This document shows, piece after piece, positions 27,493-42,190 of a stretch of DNA of 64,000 bases (its first letter is position 1; the number at the start of each line of letters is the position of its first letter). The position numbers were made by a program, and so were the translations under genes. Under the pieces are notes generated by a model. It made no database searches. It was not told where the DNA came from and saw only the letters and a program-made list of their open reading frames with translations. Source of the DNA: Polymyxa betae A26-41 (lineage: Eukaryota; Protista; Endomyxa: Phytomyxea); the NCBI GenBank assembly GCA_003693705.1, contig RBZT01000633.1, positions 62,001-126,000 on the forward strand, given 5' to 3'.

Positions 27493-29553
27493 ATGGCTGA
27501 TCCGTAATCACTGCAATTTTACTCTCTTTCCTAAGTTCCAGCACTATATATCTTTGCCCTCGCTATCGTTCTTAACATCTTTCGAAATCTTTGAAGTAAC
27601 ATTTTATTGAATGTTATTGTGGTCATTAGGGAAGTGATCAGAGACGATGAGAGCACACAAGGTTCTAACGCGTTTGGCCCCTTTTTGCGCTCGTTTATGT
27701 AGCTATAGACGATGAAGAAATTACCATAAAGCGAGTCGCTCAGCATCTTTGTGATTACTGTCGGAAAGACATCAGCCAACAGATTCGTATTAAATGTTGC
27801 CAATGCACCGATTTCGTTCTATGCGTCTTTTGCTTTGCTGATGGCGTCGAACTTAATATTGACGATCAAAACAGCCATGTGAAAACCCATCCGTACTCTA
27901 CTGAAATTTCTCTTTATTCTTTATTGATTGCCCTCGGTAGGTATCGGGTCATTGATCGCATCAATGCTCCAATATTCGATGAAGAATGGACTGCTGATGA
28001 TGAGGTGACTTTGCTTTCACAGTTCTAATACGCTTTTATTGACTTCGCTTTAGTTAATGTTATTGGAAGGCTTAGAGCGATATGGAATGGGTAACTGGCA
28101 AGAAATAACTAATCATATTGGATCGAAGAGCAAGAACAAATTGAAAATCGAACAGCATTACTGTGGCGTTTATCTGAATAGCAATATGAAACCACTTCCA
28201 GTATTATGAACATGTTTCTGCTATTCAGACCGTTGTTCACGTCTTCCAGGATCCCAATACGGTCTTAAACCCATCGCTGTATGGTAAAGATTCAACGAAT
28301 TACGGCTTGGTGACCACTGATGGAAATTCCATGACGCCCGATGTCACTATGCAATCGGCACCAACGAAACGAAAATTAACGGCAGATGCTCAAGCTGCTG
28401 GATACAGGTTATTAAACTTCTGCTGAATATATTTAGCGTTCTTATTTAGTGCTAGGGTGAAACGACGTGATTTTGATACCGAATTCGATAACAGTGCTGA
28501 AGAGCTTTTAAATGACTGCACTCTGTATGACTATAAAGACGATGCTGTCAAGCTACGATTGACATATAGGATGCTGGACGTTTTTAATCGAAAGGTTCGT
28601 ATCGTTTGAGGAGTTCGTTGTTTTATCATTCAAGCTCAAATTAGTTGGATGAGCGTGTTGAACGGAAGAAGTTCCTGATCGATCGGGGTTTGTTATGGGT
28701 TCGGTCGCATTCCAAGTATAAGCACAACAAAGAATTTAAAGCCTTCTATCAGCAAGCCAAAGTTTTCAGTCGTTTCTTCTCTTCTGAAGATGAGTTCACA
28801 GAGTGGGTGCTTTTCGAGCAGGCTTAGACGGATTTCTAATATCGTCTGTAGGTTTGTTGAAGATTTACACAAGCAGAAAATAATCGTTCGTGATGTAGCT
28901 GAATTGTGCGAACATCGTCGTAATGGTGAGCTCGATGTCCCTTTTTGTTGTGAGTGCGGCTTATCAGCTGGCTTCAGGTATTCGAAGCTTTCAAGAAGAG
29001 TTTGTATATAAGGAGCAGTCGGTTTTAAGAGAGGCTCTGGGATCCACAGCTGAATCACAAGACACAGATTGCAGCCCTACCCGGATTGCTGGTGGAAGCA
29101 GGTTTTTACCTGTCGTCGTTAATGATCTGTTGGTGTTGATTGTTCGTGCTAGAGCGGACTTGGCAGCATCTGTTGCAAACGATCTTCTAAGGCGACGTCC
29201 ATTCATTCCGGAAAATTGTATTGCTAGTCCTGATGGATTCGACATCTCGAACATGGAATGTGTCGAATTGTTGGATATGGAAGAGCGCGCGATTTGTACC
29301 AAATTTCATATGCTGCCGCGACATTTCAATATGCTAAAGCAAAAGTCAGACAGTGTACTACTTCTGGCTATTATTTGTAATGATTGTCTGATACAGAATT
29401 TGTTTGCAATCCTACGCTCAAGGTTACATCAATCTCAAAGATGCCATTCACGCTTGTGAACCTTTAGATCCCACTACCGTCACATCGCTCTATAATTTGT
29501 TTCTGAAGCGAGGCATCATCAATTCACAACCTGCAAGCGTACCGCCATCGTAA
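27493..29553 (+). CDS. ADA2: Transcriptional adaptor ADA2 (SAGA)
   Basis: ZZ finger CDYCRKDISQQIRIKCCQCTDFVLCVFCF, SANT WTADDE|LMLLEGLERYGMGNW, KRRDFDTEFDNSAE, LDERVERKKF, C-terminal SWIRM. Confidence 0.95.
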
Positions 29554-30277: not shown

Positions 30278-33200
30278 ATGCAGGTCGATGACGAGTTCGC
30301 CGAAAAACTCGTGCACGGCGATGCAAACAAGCTCGCATCGCCTGAGCCGTTAATCGGCACTATTTATGTCCCAGATCTGTACCTTGTATATCGCCAGGCA
30401 CGAGGAGGGGCTTTTTGCCAAATTGCTTCTAACCAGCAATGTAGGTCGGTATCCTTAGCGTGAATGATGGGATCGCGACCACTCGATCTGGTGATGGGCG
30501 TATTGAGGCGTTTCCATTGAGCGATTGCCTGAATGTGCCAACGTACCCTGAATATGGTACGACCAACACAGTTCTTTCGAGGCATCGCTGAGCTCGATAC
30601 AGGATATAACGATATGATTGAGATGGAATCTTTGCATACCGCCTCGATTCTGTATAATTTGCGAATTCGTTTCGCGGCCGACATCATCTATACTTACATG
30701 GGCGGGATCCTGATCTCAGTAAACCCGTTTAAATATATTGACCTGTATTCGCAAGAAACTGTTGAGGCTTATATGGATCAAGGCATGCATAAAACGGCAC
30801 CACATATTTATGCCATATCCGATTCTGTATATCGAGCCATTCTTCGCCAGGAAGGCAATCAGGCGGTCGTGATCAGGTCTTCTTATATAACGCAATGCTT
30901 TTATGGAATTTGAAACATATTTGTTTGTTTTTCTCAACTCGTTGACTTTGAGAAGACTTCTCCGATATGTAGCTTGTTGAATAAGGACAGAATGTAATGT
31001 TACAACCCCCACAGTTCGGGTTTCATAGACAGTGATTTGGATTTTTTGTCAAAGCTGCGTCTTCGTGCTTCATCTCAGTTACTGTTTAGTGGTGAGAGTG
31101 GTGCTGGCAAGACTGAAGCCGCCAAAATCGTTTTGCAGTATGTGGCCGAGGCGGCGACCCGGATCCATCCTCCCGAAGGTGCGACAACGGATGCGGAGAT
31201 GTTTCCCGTCCATGAGCGAATTTTGGCGTCAAATCCCATCCTAGAAGCATTCGGGAACGCTAAAACAATTCGCAATCATAACTCGAGTCAGTGTCATCTT
31301 GATGGCGTCAAATACAGTCTGATCTTTCATTCAGGTCGATTTGGGAAGCTCCTGCAGGCCGAGTTCGGGCAATTTGGTGCACTGATAGGTGCTTCGTTTC
31401 AAACATGTAACTACATTTGCTGTGTTTTTCTATTCTGTTTTTAACGCCCTTGATTCAGTTTTGTTGGAGAAAGTAGGCGATTCGTGATTCCGCAGCCGCG
31501 TCTGATTTGGTTGTAGTCGCGGGTCACCAAGTTGAACGCCAACGAGCGAAACTTTCACGTTTTCTACTACCTTCTTGGCAGCATCGATAGCGGTGAACGC
31601 GGTATGCCATTTGCGCCGCCAACATTTCAGCGTCACGGCTGATGCAGTGCCTCAGAATTATGGCAGCTTGGTGAAGTCAGCAACTATCATTACCTGAACC
31701 AGGTCGTCGACCATGAAGCTGTTGGCGAAGATCGACCAATGGAGTTGGCTAGGCTCAAAGTGACACTGTCGCAATTCATCGCTCAACCTTTTTTTAATTT
31801 GCGACCATAGGCAGCGATGTCAATTGCGAATTTCTCTCCTGCTGAGCAGAATGCAATTCTTAATATTGTCGCCGCCGTCTTGTGGCTTGGAAATATGCAG
31901 TTTTCAAGTGAGGAAAACTGCCGAGTCGTCAGTCGCGACGGTTGGTCGACATTTGTTTTCACCCATTTTGTTCCATGACGCACGATCGCAGTTTTAAATT
32001 GGGTGGCGTATCTGCTTGGTTTCGATGCATCTCAATTAGAGCGTGGATTAACAATCCGAACGAATATCATTAAAGGTCAATCTTGGTGTTTGAAGATTCT
32101 ATCGGTATTAAGCGTTGCCTGCAGGTGAGAAATTCGTCGTACCACTGGATGAGTCTCAGGCGACGGATACGCGGGATACGTTAGCGCAGCATATCTACGC
32201 TAAGACATTCGATTGGATTGTTGCCAAACTCAACGTTTCGGTGCGTTAACTAAAGTTTTCCAGGAATATTTGCTTTTCTTTCTATGAGATTTACCCGCCC
32301 CTTTGTTCAGCCTTTTGCTAACTGATAAGAGTTTTTGTTGGATTATTGATTGTATTTGAATCAGCTTCAAAGCGCCCAAGGTCATGACAGCATTATCGCC
32401 CTGCTGGATGTGTTCGGCTTCGAAATCTTTGAGCATAATTCCTTCGAACAGATTTGCATCAATTACGCCAATGAACGCCTACAAATGCAGTTCAACGATT
32501 ATGTTTTTCGCCTGGAGCAGCAGGAGTATGCCCTAGAGGGCATCACAATTTCTGACATCAAATTCACCGACAATCAAGGCTGTATTGATCTGATTGAAAA
32601 GGTTGTTTACTGGCATTATGCTTCGATATCTCTGACTTGTTACTCAGGGGCCGGTTGGCCTGCTTTGGCTCATTAACGAAGAAGCGCATTTTCCAAAAGG
32701 CACTGATCAGACGCTTTTGCAGAAAATACAGAGCAATCATTCATCATCGGCTTTTTTCGAGCCCGATAAATTCAATGGCGCGTCGTTCTTCATAAATCAT
32801 TTCGCCGGCAAAGTGAAATATGAAGTCACTGGATTTTTGGCTAAAAATCGCGAACGGTTCACGAAAGACTTAATTGAATTGATCGCTGACAGCACCAATA
32901 CTTTCCTGGGTGAAACATTTGCGAAGGTTCTATCTGATTTGAAAGTCGTCGAAGATGGCAAAAAGCAGAAAACAGCGACAAAATCAACGTTGGCGCTTGA
33001 ATTTCGCCGCAGCTTGGTAGAGCTGTGCGACAATCTGGCGTCCTGTCAATCAAATTTTATCCGCTGCATTAAATCGAATGATGGATGCCGGCCAAACGAT
33101 TTCGATAACGTTCTTGTCAATCGTCAGCTAAGGCATGTTACCGAATGCTACTTTAGATATATAATTAACATCGATTAGATACATTGGGGCGCTTGAAACC

Positions 33201-36200
33201 ATCCGGATTCGTCAAGAGGGCTTTGCGCAACGTCGCTCAAAAGGTAGTTTATGTACGTTGTTAGATCACCAACATTTTGCTGAAGTTTTCGAAGAGAATT
33301 TTTTGGATCGGTACTGGTGTGTTGTGCCGCTACATCTTCGTGGGAAAACTCCTGATCTTGGAATTATTCTCCAACAATTATCGGCTACCGACAAAGAAGG
33401 AATCGTTGAAGGTGCCACGAAAATTTTCATCAAGTCGGAGATTTTTGAACTACTCGAACGAAAGCGTTTCGAGACTACGGTTAGTCGTGGCAAATCTTGT
33501 TTTCACTGAAGTTAACCAAGGCATAGGCAAATGCTGCTGTTTACATCCAGACTCGTGTCCGGTCTTGGCTAATGCAGCGACAATATCGACGCTTGCGATC
33601 AGCTATCCAGACCGTACAGGCTGCACTTGCCGTGTATATTTGCCAAAACGATTGCCGGAGGGAGATTGCAACTGCATTGGAGAACATCTCAAGTGCATCC
33701 TCAATCGAGTCGCTGCGTCTATGCATCAAGGTGAAGCTGATTGAAACCGATTGAACTTTGAAAAGACTGCTTTCAGCACTTGGCAGTCGCTGGAGTTAAA
33801 AATCGCTGACTAAATTGCAGAAGAGCCACCGGGCAGTAGATTTCGTAATCGATTCAGATGGAATCGACCGAATTGTCGGCGCATTGCTAGCAGCACGATC
33901 GCCAGTGCAACGCGGCGATCTTATTTCGCTATTATCGCTGCTGATGAACGACTTTTATAGCGCTAATCTGATCGCGTCCAGGTGGTGACACCGCTTTTTT
34001 CTTGTCTGTGTGCTGAGTCTTTAGCAGGCATGACTATGATCCGATCTTGGAACACATGAACCGGGTGCCGGCTGGAATACTTTTATTACAGAGACTTGTG
34101 GAATTCCTGCCGAACATCGCACGGATTGCTAGTTCGAAGACGAATGCCGCTAACTCCTCTGTGTAAGTTGGCGCTTTCGGTTTGATACATTATTTGAATG
34201 GGCTTCAGATTGGCAACGGTTCTTGAAAAGGGCGGAAAGGGAGCGGCAGTTGCATTCGGGCGCGACGCCAAGCTGATTTTTGATCTGGTCGCCGAGCTTA
34301 ATGGTGCTAAATTTGCAGCCCACAGCGTATATTTGTTACATTGCCTCGCGAAGCTCGCAGACATCAAGAACAATCATCAGGTCTGCCAGACCATGCGTTC
34401 CGGAATTTGAGGTTCATTATGAGTAGGCGCTGTTGAACGCTGGAGTGATTGAAGCCGTACTGGGTGCTTGGGGTGACAATCAGCAATACGGTGAAATCGC
34501 CTGCACGCTGTTGGAACGCCTCAGCACCGTTATCCCAGCCTCGCTAATTCCGAGCTTGGCTCTGGTTGCAGAACAGCGTCCCCAATTCGCACCCAAACTG
34601 CTTCGCATTATCTCTGAACTGATCCAACGAGACCCTGGCACTCAAATCGATCGGCAAACCATAATTAGAGGGGTCACCACTTTCTCCGACCCAGGTAATT
34701 TACTGCATCATGACGATTGGACTTTAGTCTGATACTTGCAGAATCGTTGCGATCATTGCTCGCAATTATATCGACATCGTATGAATCCCGGATCGATGAC
34801 GAGTTGATGCAAGTCGCAATCTCCTCAGCGCTACGTGTGCTAACAGATTTTATCAACTCGAAAGCAGCAGTCGCCGCAGCCTTAAACAGTCTGCTTTTCT
34901 TCGTAAGTTTCCGTTTCGCATATCCATCAAGCTTTCGATCTGAACTGGAGCTTCTAGCTGGGCAACGATTCCAACCACACCTTTCGGTTGCTCTCTGAAA
35001 ACAACGCCCTCGGACCGCTCTGCTCCTGCGTTGCGTTTCATCACGGCGACGGTGATATCATTCCTAAAGCTCTCCGCCTCGCAGAATCGATGATGAGCGC
35101 TGATGATATCGCCGACAACATACATGAGATTTCGGACGCTCTGCTGTCAGGTGCCGAATTTGATCGCTCCGTTCGCGTTATCGCTACCGCCTCTTACCTC
35201 GAAGGCCATGTTGATAATTTGATTTCCGCTAATGCCGTTTCAGTAATGCTGTCCATTCTACAACAGTACCCTCGAAGAATAGATGCTTGTCTTAACGCCA
35301 TTCGGTGCTTAACCAACCTGTCAAGGTTCTCTGAAGCGGCTCGTAAACAAATGGTAACACCGCGTTGCTTTGTCAGTAGACTTTTCAAGCATGTTTTTCT
35401 CCAACTTAGCTCATTTGTCGCATATTACCAATGTCGGTTTTATTTAGGAACATTTGAACGGAACTGGAATTATTAGGAATGCCGTTCACTTCTCGCCAGC
35501 CCTTCTCGAGGCATACTTCGATTTTCTCGGTACGCTTTGTTTCATCGGATTCGATACCAATTTCAAAATATTGGCCTTCAGAATTCAATCATGTACCAAT
35601 GGCCAGTGTTTTCGCAATGCCTGGCATTATTGAGCAAATCACGAGGAATCCGGCAACAGCGAGCGCTGCGATTCGGGCTATTCTGCGATACAATTGCGCT
35701 GATATCTCTGGGGTGACGCAGGCTATTCTAGCTGCGATTCCACATCTCGACCAGGGCCAAATTGCTGATGTCCTACAATTCATTGAGGTGTGATATCATA
35801 TAATTCACTTTCGATTCGCTGATTACATTCAGTTGCATGGTGACGCTATCGATCACGAGCTCACGACGGAGATTCTCAACGTGCTACTGAACATGCGTTC
35901 CAAGGCGTCATTGCAAGATATGGCATTCCTAAAGTTTGTTCATCGGTCAATTCGCGCGACAGCATTTGGAGATGTGCAGCTGAAGTCCATTTGGAATCAG
36001 GTTCTGAAAGGCAGTGTGTCGAAAATCCTTATTTTTAAATTAATTGCAGATGGTTGCCTTGTTACCAAAGTTGAATTCTCAAGAAGCATCTATGACACTC
36101 ATGATTCTTAGTGAATTGTGTGATCAATCAGCTGAGTTTCTTATTTTCAATCCGAAACGGAAAGGAAAATTGCAAGCTCCTCTTGCAAATCATCCATCTT

Positions 36201-39200
36201 CGTCGCTGATTTCTGTGAGCTAAATTGCATTCTGATTTTTATGTTAATATGGCATTTGTGCCATTCCGCTGGCATTGGCACTAATTGACTTTTCAGTCGT
36301 GCCTACAGCAAATCGCCGATACAGCTGTGGATCTTCTGACTCTTCTGGCCAGCTCTTCTGCACCGAGAAAAAGGCACGTTTTGATGGCCCAGGATGCTTC
36401 CTGTAATCATATAACGGAACCTGCTTCGATTTTGTCTTCGATTGCTCAATCTGATGCCGTCCTGTTTGCTCAAATCCAAGGGATGGCATCATTTGATTCA
36501 GCGATCGCCTCAGCGCTAAAGGTCTATAACGGCTCTTTCTTTGCCGAAAATGTAATTCTGAACCAGCACAGGCGTTAGCGATTGGCGAAGGAACTGTTGC
36601 GCATCAGAAAGCTCTTGATTCGCTCGGCCCTCTATTGACATCATCGATATTGATGAGTGACGTAATAGATTGTCTGGATAGATTTCCAAATTATGATCAA
36701 TTTATGTCATGTGCAATTCCTGTTCTGACGGATAATATTCGAGCACATTCAAAGAAGTTCGCCGACCCTGGATTGGACTCGAGGATTCTATCAAGTCTCG
36801 CTAATATTTTGTTCAACAATTTCGTATGAGGGGTTTGCTCGACAAGTTTTGGATATTGATCTGACTTTCGCAGCCTTCAGATCATGTGATAGATCAGACG
36901 TTGCAGCTGTGCGAAGCGTTTCTAATCGCTCCTGACGCTGATTCTCTGTACATCGCCCCGTTATTAACAATTCTGATATTCAAAGCTGTTACCAGGTTGG
37001 CTGATGAAAGACTTACTCAGTGTGTACTCACCGGAACCAAACGTCTCGGGATGTGGCATGGCGATGTTCTTCGAGCATATTTCATGATTGGAAATGTAAT
37101 TGAAGCACTGCCAGTCGATCAGCTGTCTACTATGAGCAACGCATTGTTGTCGTTCGTCGCAGAAGGGATGCTTCTGCATTCCGATTCCGTTGTAATTCAA
37201 TTAAATGGCCTCGATCTGTTGCGAATCATTGTCAGTAAAGCTGCAAATCCCATCACTTTGGTCACCAATGCGATGCTGCATTATGCTCTTGACAATGCTG
37301 TCGAATACCACATCATGGACAGCGATGTTTGCACGAAAGGTAAATAGTCGATCATTGACACTGTTTAATTGAGAATATCCTATCAGCTCTGGAAATTGCT
37401 TCTATTTGTAAACACATTGGCCAGTATCAAGTTTTGCAGCAGCAAATTAGCGAACATGATGCGTTTCTTTTAATGAGCTTGCCACGTGTCGCACGACAGA
37501 AACGCGATTACGGTCGCGTTCTGGAACAGTTGCCCAGCCAGAATGATGATCATAAACTCGAATTCCTTATGTCGGCTTTACGCCTGCATGGTCATAACAA
37601 AACTGTAGCGAAGCTGCTCCTTGATATGTATATTAAATTTTCTAGGATCTCGCGAAAAATTGAACTTCTTGTGTGTCAGGTTGGACGGAGCCGATCCTGC
37701 ACAAATCCTTCCAATAGAAGATGATCTGACGTACGATCTGTTGAGTAACTTTCGTAATTCGTTCTGACAATGAGAATAGATTGTTTGTCTTGCAGAGCTG
37801 GGCCGGTGACGAGGAACTTACTGGACCTGGACGTCACATCCTGGCCCGGATCACTGCTCATCGACAGAATACAGAAGATCAAGTATGGGCAGCTGTTTAA
37901 CACTCTACTTTGTGTGGTAACTTTTGCTTTAGGCTCTCAAACAAACTCTTTTGGATCATGATGCTATTTTCTTGATCAATTCCATGAAGTCTTCTCCGAC
38001 CAACAAACGTCTTGTAACTGTAGCGTTGAGAATGTAACGATTTGATCGGCCTTTTTAAATGTTCGCTTAATGGAATGTTGGCGCAGACTTAACGAAGCTA
38101 ACGATGATTATTTAAATGCTGCCGATATAGAAAATGAACTCTCGTACGTCAGCATGATTGAGCAACACCTGGTTTCTGAATCGGGTTTGACCGGACAGGT
38201 TTCTGATTCGATCACATTGGAATAATGATCAGGAATTACAATCTTTGGGCAACCACGTACTGGCGAAAATTCGGGTATGATGTTTCCGGTGAGAGTGAAC
38301 TTTGTGTCTTTGCTAATTCATAATAGGACTTGGATCAAATCATTCTAGAGCCGATTGGATTTGCTGACACTCAGGTTGAATCGAGGACAGTAACTGCATT
38401 CGTGCTGATCATGCCCATAGGAATCTGTGAAATCATTGATCAACGATATCAAAGACGCCGAGGAAGACAGTTTATGCGATTCCGATGCTAAGGTTCTACT
38501 TCGTTTATTGCAGGCCCTCAATCGGTATATTTAGCTAGCATTGCTGCGCTCATGATTTTAATGCTTCTTCTAAGGTACCCAGATGATGTTGAAATGAGCA
38601 GTGATATCGCACAAGGAATATGGCGCCTGAGTAGCGTAAGAATGTCGCGAGATAAGAAGAATGTTAGATATCACCAGCGTTTATGTAAATCAGTGAACTG
38701 ACTGGATCAAGGTTTGGAGAGGAACAGGAATCGTTATAATTATTCGCGCTCTGAGTGTCCATATATTTTCTCCGACAGTGCTCTTATGGTGATTGTTCAC
38801 CGCGCTGCTGAGAATCCTTTCTGATTGTCCTATAAAGGCTCTGCCAGATTTTGAGTCTGCTTAGTGAAGATGAACACTTGAAGTCGCTAATTGGCATCCA
38901 TAGTGGGATTCCTGCCGTCTTCAAAGTCCTGCGCCAATATTTCAACCCGGATCCAGATACAAGTGACCTGCAGAATGCCTGCGCGGAAACAATCGCCTTG
39001 GTATCGCATCATAACCCTGCTAATGTAGCAGAGATTGTTCAGGGTAAACGAAACGTTGTGCAACTAAGCTAATGCATATTCATTTCGTATTGTAGATGGC
39101 GGTATTGCCCTGATGATCTCGCTGATAGACTATGAAAGTGTCGGATCCGAGTTGTTGGTCAATATCTTAGTGATTTTGACAAATGTGGCACAAGTCAGTA

Positions 39201-41201
39201 ACGGCAACAAGGTGAAAATTGTTGAGCAAGGTGGCGCTCGTGTCGTAGCGCTAGCGCTGACTTCATCAGAAACGAGCGCCGATATCATCGCCATCCAGGT
39301 AATTTGACTTGTTTTAACCCTGCAGATGGTTTATTCGAGTTCAGATCACAATGCGATGCATTGCTTCGCTAGCTATGGTATCTCAGAACGCTGATAAACT
39401 CGTCGAGGATAACGTCGTTAAAATTATTGCCACGGTTTCCAAAACCCACATAGAAAACACTCAAGTCTCAGAACAGGTTTGATGCCTTGTTTCAGCAATG
39501 TCGCCATCTTAACACCGAATTCTAGGCTGCGCAAACTATGCAAAACCTGTCTGGATGCAGCGATAAATCGAAAGAATCGATTGTCCGACAGAAAGGTGTT
39601 CACACGATTCTGTCGTTATGGGATGCGCACTATACCAACATTGTGATTGTGAACTCATGCTTAACCTGTTTGCATCAGTTATGCTCTACAATGCAATCGA
39701 GTGCCATTCCGGCCTTAATCTGCAAGCTCGGTTAGCAAAAGAAGCTCAGCAACAGGACATATTTGAACATGTAACAGGTGGTCTTGACATGCTTCTAAAG
39801 CAGAGTGAATCATTGCTGAACAAGGAGACCCTATTCGCTGTATCAGTGCAGCTACTTGCCGATCTGGCTTTTAATGAACAGATCTGCAATGTGCTGGTAG
39901 ACAGATCGATTGTGAAACGAGTAATCCAGGCGGCCGATAAACACGCCTTTGACATGAACATCGTCAAATCTGTTCTAAGGCTGATCATCATTCTGGCCAA
40001 CGCATCCGAAGAATTGTGCATTGATGTAAATAATCAACTCCATTTCAACCTTTGTCTGACTATTTGTGCTAGGTAGCCAAACAAGGGGCGATGGAATGGC
40101 CCAAATTAATGATGTCAACTCGACCAGATTCAGTAGATCTCTGGTCAGAATGTATGCTTTGCTGGACAGCATTAGCAGGTCACGATGTGCTAAGCATTCA
40201 AACCGAATATAACCATGTTCTACAGGAGCAGCACAGAACATTCTTATCGCACTGCCATTCATTGAGTCAGTCAACGTCGGCTTAGAACGGTTCAAGCACA
40301 ACGTGAATTTTGTAAAATGTGGCGCAACGCTATGGTCGCGGCTATCCATGTATCCAGTTGGGATCAAGTTGATGATAGAGCAAAAATGCATTGCCACGAT
40401 CTTGCTAACACTAGCCGAACATTCCGATGTTGCATTCGTTATTGAGAAGTTAGTAAGAACTCTTACGAACATGGTATCACTGGTTTTAGTATGGAGCTTC
40501 AAGAAATCAAATTCGTCTTGGTTAGGTTACGATTGATATGTCATCATATTCGATTCTGATCCGTGAACGGGCCCCGAAACTGATCAAAGAACTTGTCAAT
40601 CGTCATTCGGGGAATAAAGTCACCGTTAAAGTTTGTCAAAAGTTCCTGAGTCGTATGGACGAGCTGGCTGCCATGGACGCTCATATTGGAAGCGTTCGCG
40701 ATCGTGTTCCTAAAGACATGCTTAACATGATCACCGGTAATCAGATGGTACATGGGTTATTGTTTGAGATTGACTTTGATAATAGCCGGTTCCATATTCC
40801 GAAAAATGCCCAAAGGCAACCGTCGAATCGTTTCGGTTTCAGAAGATTGCCAGTATCTAATTTGGCAAGATCCGAAAACATCACAGACCAAGTCGCTGGG
40901 TTTCTGTCATGTCAGCGAAGTCAGGTAAGACACATAAAAATGCATCAGCAAACTACTGCATTAAATACATGGAACCCATAGGCCCGGGGCCTGTACGGCA
41001 GAATTACAGCACAAACCGTTGGTTGGTCGACCAGCGGACCCATCGGCCAGTTTTGCCATCTTCAGCAGACGGCAGAAAAATCCGTTGTCGTTAGAGGCAC
41101 AGAGCCCGGAAGTAGCTCGAGCTTGGCTGGTCGCTCTGGAGCTGCTGCAAACTCTGAACCATCGAGGCAATGCCAAAGAGGCGTTTGACAGCAGTAAATA
41201 G
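30278..41201 (+). CDS. Giant unconventional myosin: motor + IQ + long ARM-like tail + C-terminal PH domain
   Basis: Motor motifs [64 protein letters not shown]; [12 protein letters not shown]; many ARM-like helical exons; PH ending [27 protein letters not shown]. No intergenic gap seen between motor and tail. Confidence 0.85.
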
Positions 41202-41478: not shown

Positions 41479-42190
41479 ATGGGTTTGCTGCAGATTCTGA
41501 AGAAAGTCAAACGCAAAGAGAAGCAGATGCGTATTCTAATGCTGTAAACATCCCCCATATTAGAATATTTCTATATTGCATGTCTGAGATGCGATTTTGT
41601 GCAGCGGCCTGGATAATGCCGGCAAGACCACGATCGTGAAGAAGTTCTCTGGTGAAGATGTCACTACTGTTAGTTCAGCCATGAAATCATGGTGATAGTT
41701 CGTTGATTTTTATGCTGCAGATCAGTCCTACTTTGGGGTTTCAAATATCGACATTAGACTATCGAGGGTATACATTAAACATCTGGGATGTTGGAGGACA
41801 GACCACAATCCGTTCTTATTGGCGTAATTATTTCGAAAGAACGGACGGTCTGATTTGGGTCGTTGACAGCGTCGACGTTCTACGGTTGAAAGAATGTCGA
41901 GCACATCTGCACGAGATTCTTCAGGAAGAGGTCGTTGCACGGTTCACGACGTCGCTATCGCTTATGGTTTGTAGAGATTAGCTGGCGCGTCGTTGCTGAT
42001 CCTTGCCAATAAACAAGATCTGGATGGAGCTTTGAGCCAGGAGCAGATGGCCGAAGTCCTGCAGCTGGATAGGATCGTCTCACATCATTGGCAGATCGTT
42101 GCGGTTTGTGCAACATCCGGCCAAGGCTTGCATCAGGCAGTCGATTGGCTCGTTGAGGACATCGCTAATCGTATCTTTTTACTGGAATAA
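41479..42190 (+). CDS. ARL2: ADP-ribosylation factor-like GTPase 2
   Basis: [22 protein letters not shown]|[52 protein letters not shown]. Confidence 0.97.

What the first reader, a model, noticed from the sequence alone, without database searches (positions are those of the whole stretch)
30278..41201. Myosin motor fused to a long ARM-repeat solenoid plus terminal PH domain (glideosome-connector-like tail)
Seen: a motor with intact P-loop, switch I and switch II, one clear IQ (about 33540), then ~7 kb of exons encoding armadillo-like helical repeats (e.g. [54 protein letters not shown]) and a C-terminal PH domain. I estimate roughly 2,700 aa in total. Known: the apicomplexan glideosome-associated connector (GAC) is a giant ARM protein with a C-terminal lipid-binding PH domain that links F-actin to adhesins, and it is separate from the myosin. 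Inference: motor and connector-like scaffold may be one polypeptide here, a self-contained membrane-anchored force generator possibly used in motility or host-cell penetration. I do not recall a standard myosin class with this tail.
Basis: partly seen in the sequence, partly recalled or inferred. Interest (0 to 1): 0.9.

Follow-up and report, generated by a model that had tools for sequence, protein, structure and literature searches.

The report
Plasmodiophorid myosin with ARM-repeat/PH tail
This is one real, expressed gene of a plasmodiophorid root parasite (almost certainly Polymyxa betae) that encodes a roughly 2,700-residue myosin whose tail is a very long armadillo-type helical solenoid ending in a PLC-type PH domain; the design occurs in three plasmodiophorid species, I found no description of it, and its likeness to the apicomplexan connector GAC is an analogy, not kinship.

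Summary
The + strand at 30278-41201 carries one gene of about 50 exons (CDS about 8,151 nt, about 2,716 aa, introns mostly 42-59 nt).

- **Domain order:** N-terminal extension, complete myosin motor with intact P-loop and switches I and II, one IQ motif, about 1,850 aa of ARM/HEAT-type solenoid, a conserved helical linker, then a C-terminal PH domain.
- **One polypeptide:** a spliced RNA contig runs from inside the motor through the tail. Full-length collinear orthologues exist in Spongospora subterranea (2,666 aa, from a transcriptome) and Plasmodiophora brassicae (2,790 aa).
- **Tail fold:** AlphaFold models of the orthologue's tail match beta-catenin, importin-alpha, Vac8 and designed ARM proteins (Z 19-28).
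- **PH domain:** it is the PLC-delta/gamma type (Pfam PH_12). The sequence evidence is weak but consistent.
- **GAC:** no sequence relation was detectable. GAC is Foldseek's nominal top hit for the mid-tail, but level with CAND1, mTOR and HUWE1, and it is absent from the 50 rows shown by Z. The resemblance is architectural.
- **Motor class:** outside plasmodiophorids the motor is only about 40% identical to anything, so this is a lineage-specific (orphan) myosin.

I infer a single-headed motor anchored to membrane and cargo. This is not tested.

The parts
30278..41201 (+). Whole coding region: 50 exons, CDS about 8,151 nt, about 2,716 aa. Introns are 42-213 nt, mostly 42-59. Exon borders in 37680-38700 are the least certain.
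   Evidence: Model built from 15 RNA-defined joints plus orthologue-guided dynamic programming, then corrected by hand. One stop only, at the end, and exon-by-exon collinearity with P0001 and P0002.
30278..30556 (+). Exons 1-2: N-terminal extension before the motor. It carries the motif IGTIYVPD, which resembles the start of the SH3-like N-terminal subdomain of other myosins (my inference).
   Evidence: Collinear matches to P0002 residues 33-40 and 72-86. No Pfam hit.
30603..33479 (+). Exons 3-15: myosin motor domain.
   Evidence: Pfam Myosin_head 2-679 across the pieces. 60-95% identity per exon to P0001 1-677.
31091..31114 (+). P-loop GESGAGKT, directly after the 213-nt intron 30877-31089.
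   Evidence: Sequence read. Splicing gives ...[14 protein letters not shown], as in the orthologues.
31459..31472 (+). 14-nt micro-exon encoding LLEK, within the conserved F-LLEK-SRV stretch.
   Evidence: Needed to keep frame and to match P0001 ...GASFQTFLLEKSRVTKLN. Not seen in RNA because it lies outside the stretch I laid reads on.
32407..32424 (+). Switch II, DVFGFE.
   Evidence: Aligns with P0001 LLDVFGFE.
33133..33178 (+). GC-AG intron (donor GCATGT) inside the motor.
   Evidence: Model. The RNA contig depth in bin 32994-33190 fits these borders (my arithmetic).
33527..33730 (+). Exon 16: neck with one IQ motif (from 33545) and the junction to the tail.
   Evidence: Pfam IQ E 0.0045. 46% identity to P0001 679-746. 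Covered by the same RNA contig as the motor end and the tail.
33821..38662 (+). Exons 17-39: N-terminal and middle tail, a poorly conserved ARM/HEAT-type alpha-solenoid (20-50% identity to orthologues).
   Evidence: Splice joints from RNA for 33981 to 37680. Orthologue model all-alpha, pLDDT 74. First 500 tail residues match beta-catenin and importin-alpha at Z 17-19. Pfam Arm E 0.0038 in P0001.
38712..40482 (+). Exons 40-47: the best-conserved block, canonical three-helix ARM repeats (about 11-12 repeats). Identity to orthologues is 47-75%.
   Evidence: Orthologue model pLDDT 84-95. Designed ARM, importin-alpha and Vac8 at Z 24-28, rmsd about 3 A over about 400 residues. Foldseek 4rv1 TM 0.85. 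Pfam Arm 22.8 bits, above the cut-off, and ARM_ARMC5 E 8e-12 in P0001. Importin-alpha by sequence, E 1e-3.
40526..40736 (+). Exon 48: highly conserved helical linker (76% identity to P0001) leading into the PH domain.
   Evidence: (helices 553-619 of the model).
40786..41198 (+). Exons 49-50, interrupted by the intron 40925-40981: C-terminal PH domain of the PLC-delta/gamma type. The stop TAG follows at 41199-41201.
   Evidence: Pfam PH_12 covers profile positions 4-129 of 131 in both orthologues, E 0.0014 and 0.0027, below the cut-off. The profile of three species hits the PLC-delta1 PH (1mai, E 0.0045) and PLC-gamma PH domains first. The AlphaFold model is of low confidence here.

Best explanation
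**What it is.** A plasmodiophorid-specific unconventional myosin heavy chain, made as one polypeptide. From N to C:
- a short N-terminal extension;
- a catalytically intact motor;
- a one-IQ neck, so probably one calmodulin-like light chain;
- about 40 ARM/HEAT-type repeats forming a solenoid of about 1,850 residues, whose last 11-12 repeats are a canonical, well-conserved importin-alpha/Vac8-like ARM domain;
- a conserved helical linker;
- a PLC-type PH domain.

I saw no coiled-coil segment by eye and ran no predictor.

**Shown:** the gene, its splicing, its expression, the domain order, its conservation in three genera, and the ARM fold.

**Inferred:**
- The PH domain, with the basic RK..K...R stretch at its start, holds the tail end on a phosphoinositide-containing membrane.
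- The conserved ARM groove next to it binds an extended peptide of a partner, such as the cytoplasmic tail of a membrane protein or an adaptor.
- The long, less conserved solenoid acts as a spacer or elastic arm.
- The single head pulls or tensions actin relative to that membrane. In principle this works like a membrane-tethered class I or class X myosin, but with an ARM scaffold in place of TH1 or MyTH4-FERM.
For: **Motor.** Domain and motifs.

**Single transcript.** In one search, runs X1 and X3 hold intron-less contigs with GT..AG skips.
- Position 644 of X1's 6,332-nt contig lies at 33819, and no loose end is listed there.
- The depths of 10.7-11.2 in bins 32994-33781 equal 14.7 times the exonic share.
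- The contig therefore starts in motor exon 13 and runs past 38500.

**Orthologues.**
- P0001 (Spongospora, 2,666 aa; named) is collinear with the window from 30614 to 41198.
- P0002 (Plasmodiophora, 2,790 aa) is 46% identical to P0001 over its whole length.
- Both carry Myosin_head plus ARM hits plus PH_12.

**ARM fold.**

**PH domain.**

**Lineage restriction.**
- The tail has no paralogue in the genome.
- No other relative appeared among 1.84 billion representatives, although that query was short.
- The nearest other motors are about 40% identical, and the plasmodiophorid pair sits on its own long branch.
Against: - No functional data of any kind.
- PH evidence is below Pfam's cut-off (19.5 against 27 bits), and AlphaFold gave pLDDT below 50 for that part.
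- Structures were predicted for the Spongospora orthologue with alignments of only 2-3 species, not for the window's own protein.
- pTM of the mid-tail model is 0.44, so the overall shape of the solenoid is unknown.
- Monomeric state is inferred only from my not seeing a coiled coil; no predictor was run.
- Exon borders in 37680-38700 are modelled; I did not see them in RNA.
- The part of X1's contig upstream of 33819 was not printed in the output. Its placement is deduced from depths and the lack of a loose end.
Confidence: 0.72

Rival explanations
1. Functional counterpart of the apicomplexan glideosome in one chain. The ARM solenoid plus PH does the job of GAC, linking a surface adhesin tail and the plasma membrane to the actomyosin system. 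The protein would drive substrate-dependent movement or host-cell entry of zoospores or plasmodia.
For: - The gross design is shared: a giant ARM/HEAT solenoid of some 40-50 repeats ending in canonical ARM repeats, a linker helix and a C-terminal PH domain (GAC features from PMC10125020).
- TgGAC (8bt6) is Foldseek's first hit for the mid-tail model, with 8c4a third.
- The organism is an obligate intracellular parasite that must enter host cells (PMC6328671).
Against: - No sequence similarity to GAC even at E 10.
- The Foldseek margin is trivial: 5.7e-9 against 9.0e-9 for CAND1, with TM 0.32/0.17 and rmsd 35 A.
- GAC is not among the 50 rows shown by Z for either model.
- The PH domain is PLC-type.
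- GAC binds F-actin through its own N-terminal ARM region and has no motor.
- To my knowledge plasmodiophorids are not known to glide.
- No adhesin partner is known.
Confidence: 0.1
2. Organelle or vesicle transport motor. The conserved ARM block is a built-in cargo adaptor, as Vac8 is for yeast Myo2 or the ARM domain for plant ARK kinesins. The PH domain adds coincidence detection on an internal membrane.
For: - Vac8 is among the best structural matches, at Z 26.2 and rmsd 4.1 A over 475 residues.
- Conserved ARM H3 Asn positions (ALTNIS, VQNLSG, TLTNMV) suit binding of an extended peptide.
- ARM-tailed kinesins that move organelles exist (preprint 10.1101/2022.07.08.499237, listed).
Against: - A single IQ and no coiled coil that I could see argue against a processive two-headed transporter.
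- This rival overlaps largely with the best explanation and differs only in which membrane is the target.
Confidence: 0.12
3. The ARM tail folds back on its own head. It would act as an in-built regulator or chaperone-like element, as the ARM-built UCS domain of UNC-45 binds myosin heads, rather than as a cargo scaffold.
For: - UCS domains are ARM repeats that bind myosin motors (PMC9331494 and PMC11272940, listed).
- GAC itself closes into a ring through N/C contacts.
- The low pTM leaves the overall shape open.
Against: - No UCS or UNC-45 hit in Pfam, PDB sequence or fold searches.
- The tail is far longer than regulation would need.
- The C-terminal PH domain points to a membrane.
Confidence: 0.04
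4. Two adjacent genes (a motor and an ARM/PH protein) wrongly read as one.
For: - X3's contigs break between 33585 and 33781.
- Contigs across two close genes do occur.
Against: - X1's contig bridges the gap.
- The reading frame is open across every junction, with one stop at the end.
- There is no stop or start signal between the IQ exon and the tail.
- Two other species have the same fused protein, one of them assembled from RNA.
Confidence: 0.02

Closest known systems
Uncharacterised orthologues: Spongospora subterranea A0A0H5RAS0 / CRZ11265.1 (P0001) and the Plasmodiophora brassicae 'Myosin motor domain-containing protein' (P0002)
   Same: The same gene.
- Collinear over the full length.
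- Motor 60-80% identical, tail 20-75%, PH and linker 65-80%.
- Same Pfam content.
   Different: Only species-level divergence. Neither has a published description that I could find.
Apicomplexan glideosome-associated connector GAC (TgGAC, PDB 8bt6 / 8c4a)
   Same: A giant ARM/HEAT solenoid whose C-terminal part is canonical ARM, followed by a linker and a C-terminal PH domain. It is the nominal top Foldseek hit for the mid-tail.
   Different: - GAC has no motor and binds actin through its own ARM region.
- No sequence similarity.
- Not distinguished from other solenoids by structure.
- A different PH subtype.
- A different supergroup lineage (Alveolata against Rhizaria).
Membrane-binding unconventional myosins: class I (TH1/PH-like) and class X (PH domains plus MyTH4-FERM)
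   Same: A motor, a short IQ neck and a lipid-binding PH-type module, so the probable working principle is a membrane-tethered motor. Class X, VII and VIII motors are among the nearest, at about 40% identity.
   Different: - No TH1, MyTH4, FERM, SH3 or coiled coil detected.
- The tail is an ARM solenoid.
- The motor falls outside the VII, X, XV, IV, VIII/XI and II groups in my limited tree.
ELMO proteins (ELMO_ARM + ELMO_CED12 + PH_12)
   Same: ARM-type helical region followed by a PH_12-type PH domain. Nearest clusters by protein-language-model features. Weak ELMO_ARM hits.
   Different: - The scores are only 0.79, which the tool rates as a lead and not as evidence.
- No ELMO_CED12 domain.
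- ELMO has no motor and is about 700 aa.
Importin-alpha, Vac8 and beta-catenin ARM domains
   Same: The conserved C-terminal ARM block superposes at Z 24-28, rmsd about 3-4 A over 400-475 residues. Sequence-level hit to importin-alpha at E 1e-3.
   Different: These are stand-alone ARM proteins of 10-12 repeats. Here the block is the end of a much longer solenoid fused to a motor.

Membership tests
Myosin superfamily (Pfam PF00063) | Full-length match to the motor-domain profile | tested here: met
   Window pieces cover profile 2-679 in order. Orthologues match at E 1e-210.
Myosin superfamily (Pfam PF00063) | ATPase motifs: P-loop GESGAGKT, switch I NxNSSRFGK, switch II DxxGFE | tested here: met
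   All three are present after splicing.
Myosin superfamily (Pfam PF00063) | IQ light-chain-binding neck | tested here: inconclusive
   One IQ at E 0.0045 and 17.1 bits, below the 20.3-bit cut-off. The motif [12 protein letters not shown] is visible, and the orthologue gives E 0.05.
Armadillo-repeat fold | Tandem three-helix repeats of about 42 residues forming a right-handed superhelix | tested here: met
   Tested on the orthologue.
- Pfam Arm 22.8 bits against a 20.6-bit cut-off.
- Model pLDDT 84-95.
- Z 24-28 and rmsd about 3 A to designed ARM and importin-alpha.
- The first 500 tail residues reach Z 17-19.
- The middle 700 residues are shown only to be an all-alpha repeat.
PH domain, PLC type (Pfam PH_12, PF16457) | Sequence match over the whole domain at or above the family cut-off | tested here: inconclusive
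   - 19.5 and 18.6 bits against a 27-bit cut-off, but over profile positions 4-129 of 131 in two species.
- The profile search of PDB puts the PLC-delta1 and PLC-gamma PH domains in the first seven places, E 0.0045-0.28.
PH domain, PLC type (Pfam PH_12, PF16457) | Seven-stranded beta-sandwich capped by a C-terminal helix | tested here: inconclusive
   The AlphaFold model has three strands and the C-terminal helix but pLDDT 26-50 there.
Glideosome-associated connector (GAC) | Sequence homology to GAC orthologues | tested here: not met
   No GAC chain was returned from PDB sequences at E up to 10, whether with the tail, the tail profile or the PH profile.
Glideosome-associated connector (GAC) | About 53 consecutive ARM/HEAT repeats plus a C-terminal PH domain, without any motor | tested here: not met
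   Solenoid plus PH is present, but it is fused to a myosin motor. Structural similarity is not specific.
Glideosome-associated connector (GAC) | F-actin binding by the N-terminal ARM region, phosphatidic-acid binding by the PH domain, and binding of adhesin tails | not testable with these tools
   These are biochemical properties (PMC10125020).
MyTH4-FERM myosins (classes VII, X, XV, IV-like) | MyTH4 and/or FERM domains in the tail, and a motor that groups with the class | tested here: not met
   No MyTH4 or FERM hits. The plasmodiophorid pair lies outside these groups on a stem of 0.89 (FastTree, long myosins only).
Rhizarian myosin classes XXXV-XXXVII (Krabberod et al. 2017, PMC5455982) | Motor groups with the class in a reference phylogeny | not tested
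   - I held no labelled reference sequences.
- That paper did not include plasmodiophorids.
- The one unlabelled MMETSP myosin in my tree (taxon and class unknown to me) did not group with the pair.
ELMO family | ELMO_CED12 domain between the ARM region and the PH domain | tested here: not met
   No ELMO_CED12 hit at E up to 1.

The most novel reading that the evidence does not exclude
Plasmodiophorids have merged, by convergence, the two halves of an apicomplexan-style invasion machine into one chain. A myosin head would be joined to a GAC-like elastic ARM connector whose end grips the plasma membrane (PH domain) and the tail of a surface protein (conserved ARM groove). The result would be a self-contained force generator for zoospore attachment or entry, or for movement of the intracellular plasmodium.
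Probability: 0.1. Interest if true: 0.8.

Novelty: new variant of a known kind. Interest (0 to 1): 0.5.

Why it matters
- **A new tail design.** Myosin tails decide where force is applied. A tail of about 1,850 residues of ARM solenoid ending in a PH domain is not among the tail architectures listed in the three myosin surveys I could search. The nearest mention is a diatom orphan with HEAT repeats.
- **Lineage and hosts.** The gene is conserved in all three sequenced plasmodiophorid genera. These are obligate intracellular parasites of crops (clubroot, powdery scab) or, in Polymyxa, a vector of rhizomania virus. I found no paper dealing with plasmodiophorid myosins beyond a qualitative annotation.
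- **A ready hypothesis.** The gene is a defined, lineage-specific candidate for work on how these organisms move or enter cells, and its parts (PH domain, ARM block, motor) can each be expressed and tested. The parallel with GAC, if functional, would be a case of convergent design between Rhizaria and Apicomplexa.
- **Limits.** Orphan myosins with odd tails are common: Kollmar and Muhlhausen count 287 unclassified sequences (up to 160 potential further classes). The orthologues already sit unnamed in public databases. The surprise is therefore moderate.

Tried and rejected
- **Pfam on single tail exons** gave only sub-threshold ARM-like hits, because the exons are short. The answer came from the orthologue.
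- **The one representative-library search** used window:39597-40064. I later found that about a third of this query was in the wrong frame, because the true exons are 39526-39730 and 39778-40025. It still found P0001 through the correct part. Its finding of a single hit is a weak statement about distribution.
- **The word-indexed tail search** found only P0001 itself and missed P0002, so its blank means little.
- **MAFFT scattered short window exons** along the orthologue. I kept only well-placed exons in the alignments used for folding (A2, A6).
- **The first gene-finder runs** wrongly kept two in-frame introns (31293-31334 and 33244-33294) and put the acceptor of the long intron at 31014 instead of 31089. 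These were corrected.
- **A 'quick' IQ-TREE run did not return.** FastTree was used instead, so support values are local only. The sampling is biased to myosins of 1,466-4,665 aa.
- **Raw RNA runs X16 and X11** gave no reads on the stretch. The tool says this is no test unless another stretch shows the organism in the run.
- **Protein-atlas feature searches** pointed to ELMO at 0.79. This is kept as a lead only, and the ELMO domain itself is absent.
- **Joined protein left out, as instructed.** The joined (spliced) protein of the window was never sent to any search or fold tool. Exons were searched one by one by reference, and the Spongospora orthologue stood in for the whole protein. Inside scripts the exon chain was only translated or read codon by codon to count stops.
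- **Not used or not triggered.** I did not use complex prediction.

Full report
**Source organism.** The window is an intron-rich eukaryote with 42-46% GC in the gene region.
- The assembly has 27,085,814 bases in 1,001 contigs.
- The gene's nearest relatives are from Spongospora and Plasmodiophora.
- I therefore take the source to be P. betae or a very close relative. It is a plasmodiophorid (Phytomyxea, Rhizaria) and an obligate root endoparasite.

**The observation.** Open + strand pieces between 30533 and 33506 cover Pfam Myosin_head positions 2 to 679 in order. The catalytic motifs are intact after splicing:
- GESGAGKT at 31091-31114, directly after a 213-nt intron.
- NHNSS|RFGK, split by an intron.
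- DVFGFE at 32407-32424.

An IQ motif starts at 33545 (Pfam IQ E 0.0045, just under the cut-off). Single tail exons gave only sub-threshold ARM-like Pfam hits, because they are short.

**One gene or two.** Two public runs (X1 and X3) hold this stretch as contigs that skip 45-94-nt GT..AG segments, so they are spliced RNA.
- The share of 31-mers they hold (0.55-0.62) is what full splicing of about 26 short introns predicts (my arithmetic).
- With the 15 printed joints, the exon chain 33819-37627 is open for 1,016 codons in one frame and has 54-64 stops in the other two.
- X1's 6,332-nt contig has its position 644 at 33819, and no loose end is reported there.
- The depths in bins 32994-33781 (10.7-11.2) equal the contig's depth (14.7) times the exonic fraction of each bin.
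- The same contig therefore starts in motor exon 13 and continues through the IQ exon and the tail beyond 38500.
- Caveat: those upstream pieces were among the rows the tool did not print, so this step is deduced.

**Independent support from orthologues.**
- The only hit of a tail exon in 1.84 billion representatives is a 2,666-aa Spongospora subterranea protein (P0001; CRZ11265.1 / A0A0H5RAS0). I recall the CRZ accession series as belonging to the Spongospora transcriptome study.
- tblastn of P0001 against the window is collinear from residue 1 to 2661, window 30614 to 41198.
- A 2,790-aa Plasmodiophora brassicae protein (P0002) is 46% identical to P0001 over the whole length.
- Both have the motor at the N-terminus, ARM hits near the C-terminus and a PH_12 hit at the very end.

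**Gene model.** I fixed the RNA joints and modelled the rest with a small dynamic-programming gene finder. It used codon log-odds, splice and intron-length terms, and a bonus for positions aligned to the orthologues.
- Three corrections were made by hand. Two in-frame introns had been read through (31293-31334 and 33244-33294). The second fits both the orthologue length and the X1 depth of 10.9 in its bin. The long intron ends at 31089, not 31014.
- The result is 50 exons, a CDS of 8,151 nt and 2,716 aa, with the only in-frame stop at 41199-41201. Almost every exon maps collinearly and contiguously on P0001 and P0002.
- It includes a 14-nt micro-exon (31459-31472, LLEK) and one GC-AG intron (33133-33178).
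- Borders between 37680 and 38700 are the least certain.

**The tail fold.** I used P0001 as a proxy, aligned with P0002 and well-placed window exons.
- *C-terminal segment (P0001 1930-2666).* Mean pLDDT 71.7, with 84-95 over about 400 residues of regular three-helix repeats. Foldseek puts designed ARM proteins (4rv1, TM 0.85, rmsd 3.1 A) and beta-catenin first. VIA-align gives Z 24-28 at rmsd about 3-4 A over 400-475 residues to designed ARM, importin-alpha and Vac8. A shape search of the ESM Atlas gives SPAG6/PF16, ARMC6 and plakophilin. By sequence the same block hits importin-alpha (E 1e-3) and passes Pfam Arm (22.8 bits against 20.6).
- *Mid-tail segment (P0001 740-1939).* All-alpha, with about 70 helices, pLDDT 74 and pTM 0.44. 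Its first 500 residues align to beta-catenin and importin-alpha at Z 17-19.
- *Conclusion.* The tail is an ARM/HEAT-type solenoid of roughly 40 repeats. The ends are demonstrably ARM. The middle is shown only as a helical repeat.

**The PH domain.**
- After splicing exons 48-50, the three species share a well-conserved module of about 115 residues.
- Pfam PH_12 matches it end to end in both orthologues (E 0.0014 and 0.0027, below the cut-off).
- A profile of the three species searched against PDB sequences puts the PH domain of PLC-delta1 (1mai, E 0.0045) and the N-terminal PH domains of PLC-gamma2 and gamma1 in the first seven places.
- Visible shared motifs include EDCxxIWQ, EVRxGxxT and a C-terminal helix with the invariant Trp.
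- AlphaFold did not fold this part with confidence.
- I rate a PH fold at about 85% likely. Its ligand is unknown.

**GAC.**
- TgGAC has 53 ARM/HEAT repeats, the last 16 of them canonical ARM, followed by a linker and a phosphatidic-acid-binding PH domain. It has no motor (PMC10125020). The gross plan of this tail is indeed similar.
- HMMER finds no GAC chain at E up to 10 with the tail, its two-species profile or the PH profile.
- GAC (8bt6) is Foldseek's first hit for the mid-tail, at E 5.7e-9, TM 0.32/0.17 and rmsd 35 A. CAND1, mTOR, HUWE1 and karyopherins lie within the same order of magnitude.
- GAC is absent from the 50 rows shown by Z for both models.
- The likeness is therefore one of design, not of demonstrable descent.

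**The motor's class.**
- In both length bands that the word-indexed search allows, the best non-plasmodiophorid motors are only about 36-42% identical. They are myosins X, VII, 'XV', IV-like, plant VIII and class I.
- In a FastTree of 69 long myosins, the two plasmodiophorid proteins form a pair on a stem of 0.89, outside those groups.
- The genome has about ten myosin loci. Neither half of this tail matches any other locus.
- Another first-stage note reports a different myosin with a long ARM/HEAT-like tail elsewhere in the genome (s1-658253). No locus other than this one matched either tail half, so it is not detectably related to this tail.

**Literature.**
- The myosin surveys do not list an ARM-plus-PH tail.
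- P. brassicae myosins were annotated only qualitatively in Kollmar and Muhlhausen 2017.
- Krabberod et al. 2017 defined rhizarian classes XXXV-XXXVII without plasmodiophorids. I could not test membership of those classes.

**Mechanism (inferred).**
- One head and one IQ, with no coiled coil that I could see, suggest a monomer.
- The PH domain and the adjoining conserved helical linker would sit on a membrane.
- The neighbouring canonical ARM block has conserved H3 asparagines, as in importin-alpha. It would hold an extended peptide of a partner.
- The long, fast-evolving solenoid would be a spacer or spring.
- The motor would then tension or move actin relative to that membrane.
- Which membrane, which partner and which life stage are all open.

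**Verdict.** It is an analogy as regards GAC, and speculative as regards function. I file the gene as a new tail variant of the unconventional myosins, restricted so far to plasmodiophorids, and of moderate interest.

Noticed in passing
window 28054-28606 (+): The upstream neighbour is an ADA2-like transcriptional adaptor: Myb/SANT (E 3e-5) followed by the TADA2A-like third domain (E 8e-10).
   Followed up: partly
window 41685-42187 (+): The downstream neighbour, starting about 250-500 nt after the myosin stop, is an Arf-family small GTPase (Pfam Arf E 3e-29 and 1.5e-16 on two exons). By eye it resembles ARL2.
   Followed up: partly
window 30278-41201: The introns are very short and uniform (median 49 nt). 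The exceptions are 30877-31089 (213 nt), 32241-32364 (124 nt), 35354-35447 (94 nt), 33731-33820 (90 nt) and 36215-36296 (82 nt). Two in-frame, stop-free introns (31293-31334 and 33244-33294) are easy to read through as coding.
   Followed up: yes
window 33133-33178: GC-AG intron (donor GCATGT) in the motor. Its borders fit the RNA contig depth.
   Followed up: partly
G000 contigs C12, C232, C535, C596, C617, C663, C675, C709, C830: About nine further myosin-head loci lie in the same genome. Other first-stage notes describe PTEN-C2-tailed and other ARM/HEAT-tailed myosins among them. The myosin repertoire of this small genome looks unusually inventive in its tails.
   Followed up: no
runs X1-X6: Runs listed with kind '?' hold only the spliced form of the gene (55-62% of the 31-mers). 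They are therefore RNA-derived, although they are not on record as RNA.
   Followed up: partly
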